A stretch of DNA of 63,933 bases, filler included, from Octopus bimaculoides (taxonomy: Eukaryota): NCBI RefSeq assembly GCF_001194135.2. It is 4 parts of 4 records of this genome, joined end to end, with 100 filler letters (N's around TTAATTAATTAA, not from the genome) between each part and the next. Parts side by side here need not be neighbours in the genome. Positions count along the whole stretch, not along the records: positions 1 to 23,977 come from NC_068983.1; 3 more parts are not named here. The stretch is one strand, 5' to 3'. The position numbers and the translations under genes were made by a program. The notes under the pieces were generated by a model. The model saw only the letters and a program-made list of their open reading frames with translations, made no database searches and was not told where the DNA came from. Shown here in pieces: positions 8,484 to 8,954 of this stretch (the stretch's first letter is position 1; every line of letters begins with the position of its first letter).

Positions 8484-8954
8484 TAGTGTATACGTTTACA
8501 TTTATGTGCGTTGACTACAGCATTAGAGCAATTTAGCCTTTATTTCTAACAGTGTAGGCGTTTTGTTTTCTAACACCCTAGACACATTTAGAGATAGGTA
8601 TAATTCTCCTTTTTGATGAAACATTGCAAACTGCTGTTTATATTAATTTTATGTATACACATTAGCGAATCGCTAAATTATTCATAGATTTCTATGATGA
8701 CAACATATATACTAATAGAGAAGCGAGTCCGGAAAGAGCCGAAGTTCGAACCAGTCCTTACTGAAGAGACAAACAGAAATTGCCGAAACTGACGTCAGTG
8801 TAAGGAATTCTCGATCGGCACTTTCCGGACGATTAAGGTCCCTGCTAGTGTATATGTTTACATTTTTGTGCGTTGACTATAGTATGAAAGCATTTTAGCT
8901 CTTACTTCTAGCAACACCCTAGTCACAATTAGAGACAATTACAATTCTCCTTTT
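8484..8954 (+). repeat. Diverged direct repeats (8484-8613 and 8846-8954, period about 362 bp) flanking a hammerhead ribozyme
   Basis: tagtgtata(c/t)gtttacattt..gtgcgttgacta..aacaccctag..ttagaga..aattctcctttt occurs twice with indels; ends in (TA)n. Confidence 0.8.
8727..8830 (+). ncRNA. Type I hammerhead ribozyme (cleavage triplet GUG, so probably inactive in this copy)
   Basis: Stem I TCCTTA(8755-60)/TAAGGA(8801-06); core CTGAAGA(8761-67); stem II GACAA-ACAGAAA-TTGCC; GAA; palindromic stem III ACTGACGTCAGT(8788-99); N17=G. Stem I is extended by TCGA/TCGA and GTCCGGAAAGAGCCGA(8727-42)/TCGGCACTTTCCGGAC(8815-30), 15/16 paired. Confidence 0.8.

What the first reader, a model, noticed from the sequence alone, without database searches (positions are those of the whole stretch)
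8727..8830. Near-canonical full-length type I hammerhead ribozyme inside a ~362-bp direct-repeat unit (retrozyme-like)
Seen: the complete core CUGAAGA..GAAA with all three stems, a 12-nt palindromic stem III, and a stem I extended through an internal loop into a 15/16-bp helix. It sits between two diverged direct repeats (8484-8613, 8846-8954) and the unit ends in (TA)n. Established: tandem units of a few hundred nt each carrying a type I hammerhead define metazoan non-LTR retrozymes and Penelope pLTRs, and palindromic stem III permits dimeric cleavage. Inference: this is a relic of a cephalopod retrozyme/circRNA-producing family. N17 is G (GUG breaks the NUH rule) and stem II has one A.C mismatch, so this copy is probably dead through about two point changes.
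Basis: partly seen in the sequence, partly recalled or inferred. Interest (0 to 1): 0.85.

Follow-up and report, generated by a model that had tools for sequence, protein, structure and literature searches.

The report
Dead hammerhead ribozyme in repeat relic
A 104-base hairpin holds every conserved core base of a type I hammerhead (self-cutting) RNA inside 1.4 copies of a 362-base repeat, but the base at the cutting site is the one that blocks cutting, so it is most likely a dead leftover of an already known kind of mobile element.

Summary
At 8755-8806 (+) there is a complete type I hammerhead layout. It has a 6-bp helix I, the core CUGAAGA, a 5-pair helix II with one A.C mismatch, GAAA, and a 12-nt palindromic helix III. 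Helix I continues outward to 8727/8830, giving 25 Watson-Crick pairs. A descriptor this loose found no match in 20 Mb of simulated sequence, and the fold z-score is -4.9, so chance is excluded. The motif fails Rfam's threshold (Hammerhead_1 13.4 bits against 34). Position 17 is G, which breaks the NUH cleavage rule and pairs with C3 in the predicted fold, so this copy is almost certainly inactive. It lies in 1.43 copies of a 362-nt unit (arms 81% identical, GC 37%) that ends in (TA)17 and an assembly gap. Unit size, base composition and strong self-pairing match metazoan non-LTR retrozymes and Penelope-derived repeats. The defining features could not be shown: there is only one ribozyme, no second copy in the window, and no related copy could be retrieved from any collection. 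I could not confirm that the source is a cephalopod. Verdict: a real hammerhead-derived relic and probably a dead retrozyme-like monomer, with family membership untested. Ordinary; low interest.

The parts
8481..8662 (+). Direct-repeat arm A, the first 182 nt of the 362-nt unit
   Evidence: Aligns with 8843-8999 at 81% identity (127 of 157 aligned positions) with indels of 21, 3 and 1 nt. Similarity starts sharply at 8481/8843.
8663..8726 (+). AT-rich spacer of the unit between arm A and the ribozyme hairpin
   Evidence: Read. No counterpart is preserved in the second, truncated unit.
8727..8830 (+). Whole ribozyme hairpin: a type I hammerhead at the tip of a 25-bp helix I
   Evidence: MFE -39.1 kcal/mol, z = -4.87, and 0 of 200 shuffles fold as well. 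All 25 helix I pairs are Watson-Crick. The helix has one A.A mismatch (8737/8820), one AGU bulge (8743-8745) and an internal loop ACCAG/AUUC (8750-8754 / 8807-8810).
8755..8806 (+). Hammerhead proper: helix I proximal 6 bp, the core, helix II, helix III and the cleavage-site position
   Evidence: The only descriptor hit in the window. Full-length alignments to Rfam Hammerhead_1 (model positions 1-45) and to the hammerhead part of RAGATH-1 match all core bases except position 17, but score below gathering.
8761..8767 (+). Core strand C3-A9, CUGAAGA
8768..8784 (+). Helix II (GACAA/UUGCC, with an A8769.C8783 mismatch at 10.2/11.2) and the 7-nt loop 2 ACAGAAA
   Evidence: With A8769 changed to G, the hammerhead fold goes from -34.5 to -41.7 kcal/mol, and helices II and III appear in the MFE structure.
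8785..8788 (+). Core strand G12 A13 A14 plus A15.1 (GAAA)
8788..8799 (+). Helix III, the perfect 12-nt palindrome ACTGACGTCAGT. As a monomer it forms 4 bp plus an ACGU loop. It can also pair between two copies.
   Evidence: The cofold of two copies forms the extended intermolecular helix.
8800..8800 (+). Position 17, where cleavage would occur on the 3' side. It is G where A, C or U is required.
   Evidence: Both Rfam consensus sequences have C here. In the MFE structure G8800 pairs with C8761, which is C3. The NUH rule is stated in PMC12192606.
8843..8999 (+). Direct-repeat arm A', the truncated second unit. It contains a 22-nt 2.2-copy internal duplication at 8937-8986.
8985..9019 (.). (TA)17.5 microsatellite into which the second unit runs
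9051..9060 (.). Assembly gap (10 N) lying 31 nt after the (TA)n. The 3' end of the repeat is therefore unresolved.
   Evidence: There is no significant similarity to the unit on either side of the gap.

Best explanation
This is a decayed, isolated copy (1.43 units) of a non-autonomous retroelement that carries a type I hammerhead. It is the kind described as metazoan non-LTR retrozymes, which are thought to derive from the terminal repeats of Penelope-like elements.

Inferred life cycle of the ancestor:
- A multimeric transcript was cut after position 17 by the hammerhead.
- The roughly 362-nt monomer, with 5'-OH and 2',3'-cyclic phosphate ends, was closed into a highly self-paired circle by a host RtcB-type ligase.
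- The circle was copied back into DNA by a Penelope-type reverse transcriptase, here at or next to a (TA)n tract.

This copy no longer works. G8800 at position 17 cannot be cleaved and instead pairs with C3, which extends helix I. Helix II is weakened by the A8769.C8783 mismatch.

Shown here: the motif, its non-random structure, the two defects, the partial tandem repeat and the self-pairing of the unit. Inferred: the retroelement origin, the circular RNA stage and the loss of activity.
For: - Hammerhead layout: complete, with all invariant core bases. It has the canonical metazoan type I architecture of a 6-bp helix I, then an internal loop, then a closing stem (architecture as described in PMC4209133).
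- Chance is excluded: 0 hits in 20 Mb of simulated sequence against 1 hit in 24 kb, and fold z = -4.87.
- Repeat structure: the period is 362 nt with arms 81% identical, and unit GC is 36.7%. Published retrozymes are 170-400 nt with low GC, and the mussel repeats are 350-390 bp (PMC7229834).
- Self-pairing: the unit folded as a circle from the would-be cleavage site gives -93.3 kcal/mol with z = -4.6. Even the 258 nt outside the ribozyme hairpin give z = -3.0. Retrozyme circles are described as highly self-paired.
- Dispersed single units of retrozyme families are reported to be common (bioRxiv 10.64898/2026.07.22.740005).
- Penelope-like elements show an insertion bias for microsatellites, including (TA)n (PMC8557442).
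- Type I hammerheads exist in cephalopod genomes: 235 Rfam Hammerhead_1 loci in the giant squid (PMC6962438).
- Inactivity: G at position 17 against the NUH rule. The native hammerhead fold is 4.6 kcal/mol above the MFE, and A8769 to G removes most of that gap.
Against: - There is only one ribozyme at the locus, and no second copy of the unit or the motif anywhere in 24 kb.
- No related copy was found elsewhere. These searches could hardly see cephalopod non-coding DNA, so the negative results are weak. They were a six-frame protein search, a flank search, an exact ORF look-up and two metagenome scans.
- The motif is below every Rfam threshold.
- No Penelope reverse transcriptase or GIY-YIG reading frame lies between or beside the repeats. 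The nearest RT-like relic is 7.5 kb away and is unclassified.
- No target-site duplication is visible, and the 3' end is lost in (TA)n plus an assembly gap.
- The hairpin is cleaner than the arm divergence predicts. With about 10% change per lineage, I expect about 7 of 36 pairs to be altered. Only 2 are non-pairs and none is G.U, which gives a binomial p of about 0.02 by my arithmetic. Either the two arms were already different when inserted, or the hairpin has been under constraint.
Confidence: 0.6

Rival explanations
1. It is a solo terminal repeat (pLTR) fragment of an autonomous Penelope-like element whose coding part was truncated or deleted, and not a member of a separate non-coding retrozyme family.
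For: Hammerheads sit in the pLTRs of canonical Penelope-like elements, and most occur as single motifs from truncated copies (PMC4209133). Partial tandems, microsatellite targets and assembly gaps are typical of these elements (PMC8557442). Retrozymes and pLTRs are reported to be sister sequences.
Against: Hammerheads of metazoan Penelope-like elements are 'minimal': helix III is absent or 1 bp, helix II is 7-8 bp and helix I is 4-5 bp. This one has the canonical build, with a 6-bp helix I plus internal loop and a stable helix III. No RT or GIY-YIG frame adjoins it.
Confidence: 0.15
2. It is a hammerhead-derived hairpin that the host has kept for another role, as a structured RNA that does not cleave or cleaves only after modification. 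The amniote intronic HH9/HH10 motifs and the Clec2 motif are the comparable co-opted cases.
For: There are 25 helix I pairs with no G.U and a perfect 12-nt helix III palindrome, although the flanking arms have diverged by 19%. My binomial estimate for so few altered pairs is p about 0.02. Co-opted hammerheads are known (PMC6155905).
Against: No orthologue or second copy is available, so conservation is untested. The arm divergence may pre-date insertion. The surroundings are transposon debris and microsatellites, with no recognisable gene.
Confidence: 0.07
3. It is a local tandem duplication or small satellite that happens to include an old hammerhead of unrelated origin. Under this reading the 362-nt period says nothing about mobility.
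For: Only 1.43 units are present, and a further 22-nt internal duplication and a (TA)n tract show that the region is prone to slippage. No copies were found elsewhere.
Against: It leaves the origin of the hammerhead unexplained. Every known source of type I hammerheads in animal DNA is a repeat or retroelement family. The whole unit, not just the hairpin, is unusually self-paired.
Confidence: 0.1
4. It is a chance resemblance: an ordinary inverted repeat whose tip happens to spell the hammerhead core.
For: It fails all curated model thresholds, and it has two departures from the consensus.
Against: The relaxed descriptor gives 0 hits in 20 Mb of simulated sequence. My estimate is about 4e-4 per window before the 15/16 distal helix is counted, and well below one per genome after. 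Fold z = -4.87.
Confidence: 0.02

Closest known systems
Metazoan non-LTR retrozymes (coral, mussel, axolotl; Cervera and de la Pena 2020, PMC7229834)
   Same: A type I hammerhead with a 6-bp helix I followed by an internal loop. A unit of a few hundred nt, here 362 against 350-390 in the mussel. Low GC content, a highly self-paired unit, and no LTR, primer-binding site or polypurine tract.
   Different: Only 1.43 units and one ribozyme are present here. Position 17 is G. Helix III is longer (4 bp plus a loop, as a 12-nt palindrome) than the usual 1-2 bp. Copy number and circular RNA are unknown.
Minimal hammerheads in the pLTRs of Penelope-like elements (Cervera and de la Pena 2014, PMC4209133)
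   Same: A hammerhead inside a direct repeat of a retroelement. Partial tandem arrangement, association with microsatellites, and a palindromic helix III region that allows dimers.
   Different: The Penelope motifs lack a real helix III and have a long helix II and a short helix I. No RT/GIY-YIG frame is present here.
Schistosoma Sm-alpha and newt satellite 2 hammerheads
   Same: A type I motif in a repeat of about 330 bp. The internally looped extension of helix I is needed for monomer activity (PMC6155905).
   Different: Those are high-copy, active, cleave at GUC, and match Rfam Hammerhead_1. This copy does not reach the threshold (13.4 bits against 34), and its loops have different sequences.
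Co-opted amniote hammerheads (HH9/HH10, Clec2 discontinuous motif)
   Same: A single, non-tandem genomic hammerhead with well-kept helices.
   Different: Those are conserved across species, lie in genes and are catalytically competent. Here neither conservation nor a host gene is shown, and the cleavage-site base is disabling.

Membership tests
Hammerhead ribozyme, type I (Rfam RF00163) | Invariant core bases C3 U4 G5 A6 G8 A9, G12 A13 A14, and the A15.1-U16.1 pair | tested here: met
   CUGAAGA at 8761-8767, GAAA at 8785-8788, and A8788-U8799 paired.
Hammerhead ribozyme, type I (Rfam RF00163) | Three helices around the core, with helix I open and helices II and III capped by loops | tested here: met
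   Helix I has 6 bp plus 19 distal bp. Helix II has 4 pairs plus one A.C mismatch and a 7-nt loop. Helix III has 4 bp and a 4-nt loop.
Hammerhead ribozyme, type I (Rfam RF00163) | The cleavage-site base at position 17 is A, C or U (NUH rule) | tested here: not met
   G8800. The consensus is C. The rule is stated in PMC12192606.
Hammerhead ribozyme, type I (Rfam RF00163) | Score at or above the curated gathering threshold | tested here: not met
   13.4 bits against 34, and no hit at gathering.
Hammerhead ribozyme, type I (Rfam RF00163) | Self-cleavage activity | not testable with these tools
   This needs in vitro transcription of 8700-8850.
Metazoan non-LTR retrozyme | Head-to-tail repeats, each carrying a hammerhead, so at least two ribozymes flank a unit | tested here: not met
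   There is one ribozyme. The second unit stops after 157 nt in (TA)n and a gap. More units could be hidden in the 10-N gap.
Metazoan non-LTR retrozyme | Unit of about 150-450 nt with GC below 50% and no coding capacity | tested here: met
   362 nt with GC 36.7%, and no reading frame longer than 59 codons.
Metazoan non-LTR retrozyme | Multi-copy family in the genome | not testable with these tools
   No eukaryotic genome collection can be searched by DNA here. Indirect attempts found nothing.
Metazoan non-LTR retrozyme | Expressed as a small, highly self-paired circular RNA | tested here: inconclusive
   Self-pairing is supported in silico (z = -4.6, 65% of bases paired). Expression and circularity cannot be tested.
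Penelope-like element (pLTR) | Direct repeats flanking an RT plus GIY-YIG reading frame | tested here: not met
   Only 180 nt lie between the arms. No RT or GIY-YIG match is nearby. The RT-like relic at 16306-16973 has no Pfam assignment.
Penelope-like element (pLTR) | Minimal hammerhead (helix III of 0-1 bp, long helix II, short helix I) | tested here: not met
   The build is canonical, not minimal (against the description).

The most novel reading that the evidence does not exclude
The hairpin is not simply decaying. It is a hammerhead-derived double-stranded RNA element kept by selection in a non-cleaving or conditionally cleaving state.

Two observations leave this open. All 25 helix I pairs are Watson-Crick, with no G.U wobble, although the neighbouring arms have diverged by 19%. 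The single helix II defect is an A opposite C. From general knowledge, that is the context adenosine deaminases acting on RNA prefer, and inosine there would restore the pair. In an animal group with heavy RNA editing, a ribozyme helix gated by editing would be new. G17 would still block cleavage, so at most this would be a structural or editing-recruiting element.
Probability: 0.04. Interest if true: 0.6.

Novelty: new member of a known kind. Interest (0 to 1): 0.22.

Why it matters
If the family reading is right, this adds a locus, and possibly a lineage-specific family, to the known retrozyme and Penelope-related hammerhead repeats of animals. No retrozyme report for cephalopods turned up in the held library. 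The only hammerhead mention found there was a count of 235 Rfam hits in the giant squid. The practical value is modest. It gives a seed sequence for finding the family and its active consensus, and an example of how a disabled copy slips below Rfam thresholds while still being clearly recognisable. It does not open a new question on its own.

Tried and rejected
1. Rfam at gathering score over the whole piece found nothing. At permissive E-values only sub-threshold hammerhead hits appear, and only when the search space is narrowed.
2. A second copy inside the window was sought with blastn at word size 7, my descriptor and Rfam. None was found.
3. Other family copies by way of predicted proteins. 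All six reading frames across the ribozyme were searched as one query, and twelve stop-free stretches from the 1.3 kb upstream and arm A were searched as another. Neither gave a hit. The exact 32-residue ORF was looked up and is not on record. That database holds few very short products, so these negatives say little about copy number.
4. Two exact-pattern scans of metagenome contigs were run, one for the ribozyme and one for arm A. Both gave 0 hits, as expected if no cephalopod DNA is present there.
5. Searching the literature for the literal sequence returned only unrelated primers. Supplements of the two most relevant papers held nothing usable.
6. I tested whether the second unit continues beyond the (TA)n or the gap. 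There is no significant similarity.
7. Pol III type promoter: a B-box-like GTTCGAACC lies in helix I, but I could find no A box by eye and no tRNA-like gene. Rejected as unsupported.
8. Identifying the organism: the Logan runs SRR11869390-94 hold relatives of a neighbouring transposon relic, but they could not be traced to a species.

Full report
**What is in the sequence**

On the + strand:
- UCCUUA (8755-8760) pairs with UAAGGA (8801-8806) to form a 6-bp helix I.
- CUGAAGA (8761-8767) is the first core strand.
- GACAA (8768-8772) and UUGCC (8780-8784) enclose the loop ACAGAAA. They form helix II, with one A.C mismatch at 8769/8783.
- GAAA (8785-8788) is the second core strand.
- ACTGACGTCAGT (8788-8799) is a perfect 12-nt palindrome. 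In one molecule it gives a 4-bp helix III with an ACGU loop.
- G8800 occupies position 17, the base after which a hammerhead cuts.

Beyond an internal loop (ACCAG/AUUC), helix I continues with 4 bp, an AGU bulge, 5 bp, an A.A mismatch and 10 bp, out to 8727/8830. The predicted fold of the 104 nt has 25 helix I pairs, all Watson-Crick, at -39.1 kcal/mol. The z-score is -4.87 and no shuffle of 200 folds as well. In that fold G8800 pairs with C8761 (C3). From general knowledge of the ribozyme, this is the usual explanation for why G is not tolerated at position 17.

**Is it more than chance?**

I wrote a deliberately loose descriptor. It requires helix I of at least 5 bp, CUGANGA, a helix II of at least 4 pairs with one mismatch allowed, GAAA, and a helix III of at least 4 bp starting with an A-U pair. 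It accepts any base at position 17.
- It finds exactly this site in the window, on either strand.
- It finds nothing in 20 Mb of first-order Markov sequence with the window's composition, searched on both strands.
- My own arithmetic from base composition gives about 8e-9 per position and strand. That is about 4e-4 per window and some 40 chance hits in a 2.5-Gb genome.
- The flanking 15/16 inverted repeat adds roughly a further 1e-5. The complete structure is therefore not expected by chance even once per genome.

Curated models do not call it.
- There is nothing at gathering score.
- Hammerhead_1 scores 13.4 bits against 34. The hammerhead part of RAGATH-1 scores 20.6 bits against 56.3.
- Both alignments are full-length and match every core base except position 17, where the consensus is C.
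- In a whole-window scan at E <= 10 the site is not listed.

The motif is therefore real and hammerhead-derived, but it fails a formal membership threshold.

**Is it active?**

Almost certainly not. Hammerheads cleave at NUH sites, where H is A, C or U (PMC12192606). Here the triplet is GUG.

The native hammerhead secondary structure is 4.6 kcal/mol less stable than the MFE (-34.5 against -39.1). Changing A8769 to G lowers it to -41.7, and helices II and III then appear in the MFE structure. This supports the idea that the A.C mismatch is derived.

A helix II mismatch alone need not be lethal. The axolotl HHR_Amex2 family has a U.U mismatch at the base of helix II and still cleaves (PMC7229834). 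G17 is therefore the one clearly disabling change.

Helix III is stable on its own, so dimer formation through the palindrome is possible but not needed.

**The repeat around it**

- 8481-8662 and 8843-8999 align with 127 matches, 30 mismatches and three indels (81% identity). The start-to-start spacing is 362.
- Similarity begins abruptly at 8481/8843.
- The second unit carries an internal 22-nt duplication (8937-8986) and runs into (TA)17.5 at 8985-9019.
- Thirty-one bases later there is a 10-N assembly gap.
- Neither the 31 nt before the gap nor the sequence after it resembles the unit.

The locus is therefore 1.43 units with a single ribozyme. More units could be hidden in the gap.

The unit has 36.7% GC. 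Folded as a circle starting at the would-be cleavage site, it gives -93.3 kcal/mol with z = -4.6 and 65% of bases paired. The 258 nt outside the ribozyme hairpin still give z = -3.0.

**Comparison with known systems**

- Metazoan type I hammerheads are described as having a 6-bp helix I and a 4-bp helix II that interact through loops, and a short helix III with a palindromic loop (PMC4209133).
- They lie in tandem repeats of 150-450 bp with low GC. These repeats are expressed as highly self-paired circles of 170-400 nt. The mussel units are 350-390 bp (PMC7229834).
- A 2026 preprint reports that dispersed monomers are common and that these repeats are sisters of Penelope-like element terminal repeats.
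- Penelope-like elements form partial tandems, favour microsatellites including (TA)n, and break short-read assemblies (PMC8557442).
- The giant squid genome paper counts 235 Rfam Hammerhead_1 loci.

The locus fits this picture in architecture, unit size, composition and self-pairing. It does not show the defining tandem pair of ribozymes. It has no adjoining RT/GIY-YIG frame. Its hammerhead is of the canonical type and not the minimal Penelope type.

**The missing test**

The decisive evidence would be other copies and their consensus. I could not obtain it.
- None of the DNA collections available here holds cephalopod genomes.
- Two exact-pattern metagenome scans found nothing.
- I tried to reach copies through predicted proteins from public read assemblies. 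I used all six reading frames across the ribozyme and twelve stop-free stretches from the flank and arm A. Neither gave a hit.
- The exact 32-residue ORF is not on record.
- Literature searches for the literal sequence, and searches of the supplements, gave nothing usable.

These negatives are weak, because short non-coding repeats are poorly represented in a protein database.

**One oddity**

If the two arms began identical, 19% divergence means about 10% change per lineage. About 7 of the 36 helix pairs should then have been altered. Only two are non-pairs and none is a G.U wobble, giving a binomial p of about 0.02 by my arithmetic.

The simplest reading is that the arms were already different when inserted, since retrozyme RNA populations are heterogeneous. 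Constraint on the hairpin is not excluded. That possibility is the basis of the low-probability novel reading.

**Surroundings**

The piece is draft-quality repeat-rich DNA with six internal N gaps. It contains:
- a mariner-type transposase relic (PF01359);
- an unclassified RT-like relic with relatives in Logan runs SRR11869390-94 at 76-78% nucleotide identity;
- four copies of a SINE-like element of about 200 nt;
- many microsatellites, which produce spurious microRNA matches.

No host gene was recognised. I could not confirm the organism.

**Verdict**

This is a genuine but disabled type I hammerhead in a retrozyme-like partial repeat. It is a new member of a known kind at most, and family membership is still to be tested. 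Interest is low.

Noticed in passing
window 8790-8797 and 8744-8752: At the DNA level, helix III of the ribozyme contains TGACGTCA, the perfect cAMP-response-element palindrome. The 5' strand of distal helix I contains GTTCGAACC, which resembles a Pol III B box. No A box was seen by eye and ARAGORN finds no tRNA-like gene. Both are probably coincidental.
   Followed up: partly
window 14894-15659 (-): A mariner-type transposase relic split over three frames. One piece matches Pfam Transposase_1 (PF01359) at E = 1e-18, and an HTH-like piece lies upstream.
   Followed up: partly
window 16306-16973 (+); loci L001, L003, L004, L005, L002: A frameshifted RT-like relic (MGS..., YRDDAL, FLDV, KPN..., SNHH motifs) with no Pfam or PDB match. 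Its relatives occur only in Logan runs SRR11869390/91/94 (76-78% nucleotide identity) and one ENA metagenome contig. I could not say whether it belongs to a Penelope-like element or to another class.
   Followed up: partly
window 9130-9328, 1459-1633, 10025-10185, 22401-22491: Four copies of a SINE-like repeat of about 200 nt, about 78% identical to one another. One starts only 70 nt beyond the gap that follows the ribozyme repeat.
   Followed up: partly
window 4054-4326 (-) and 11728-11997 (+): Stop-free stretches that look to me like C-terminal parts of LINE reverse transcriptase proteins. Pfam gave no significant match, so this rests on my reading only.
   Followed up: partly
window 2779-2832, 6549-6613, 9051-9060, 10851-10918, 12208-12470, 14523-14798: Six internal N gaps, most of them next to (TA)n, (CA)n or (TG)n tracts. 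The assembly is a draft and repeat arrays here may be collapsed.
   Followed up: no
window 7104-7213, 18414-18541, 5773-5894, 14161-14300: Adjacent (CA)n/(TG)n and (TA)n tracts form the most stable hairpins in the window, down to -71 kcal/mol per 104 nt. They give sub-threshold matches to microRNA families (mir-3149, mir-297, mir-1277), which are low-complexity artefacts.
   Followed up: yes
window 8760-8764 and 8796-8806: The 5' strand of helix III (ACUGAC) repeats the A-CUGA of helix I and the core. The 3' strand of helix III can therefore pair with the core instead, leaving G8800 as a single bulge. This competing inactive fold becomes the MFE when position 17 is changed to C or A.
   Followed up: partly
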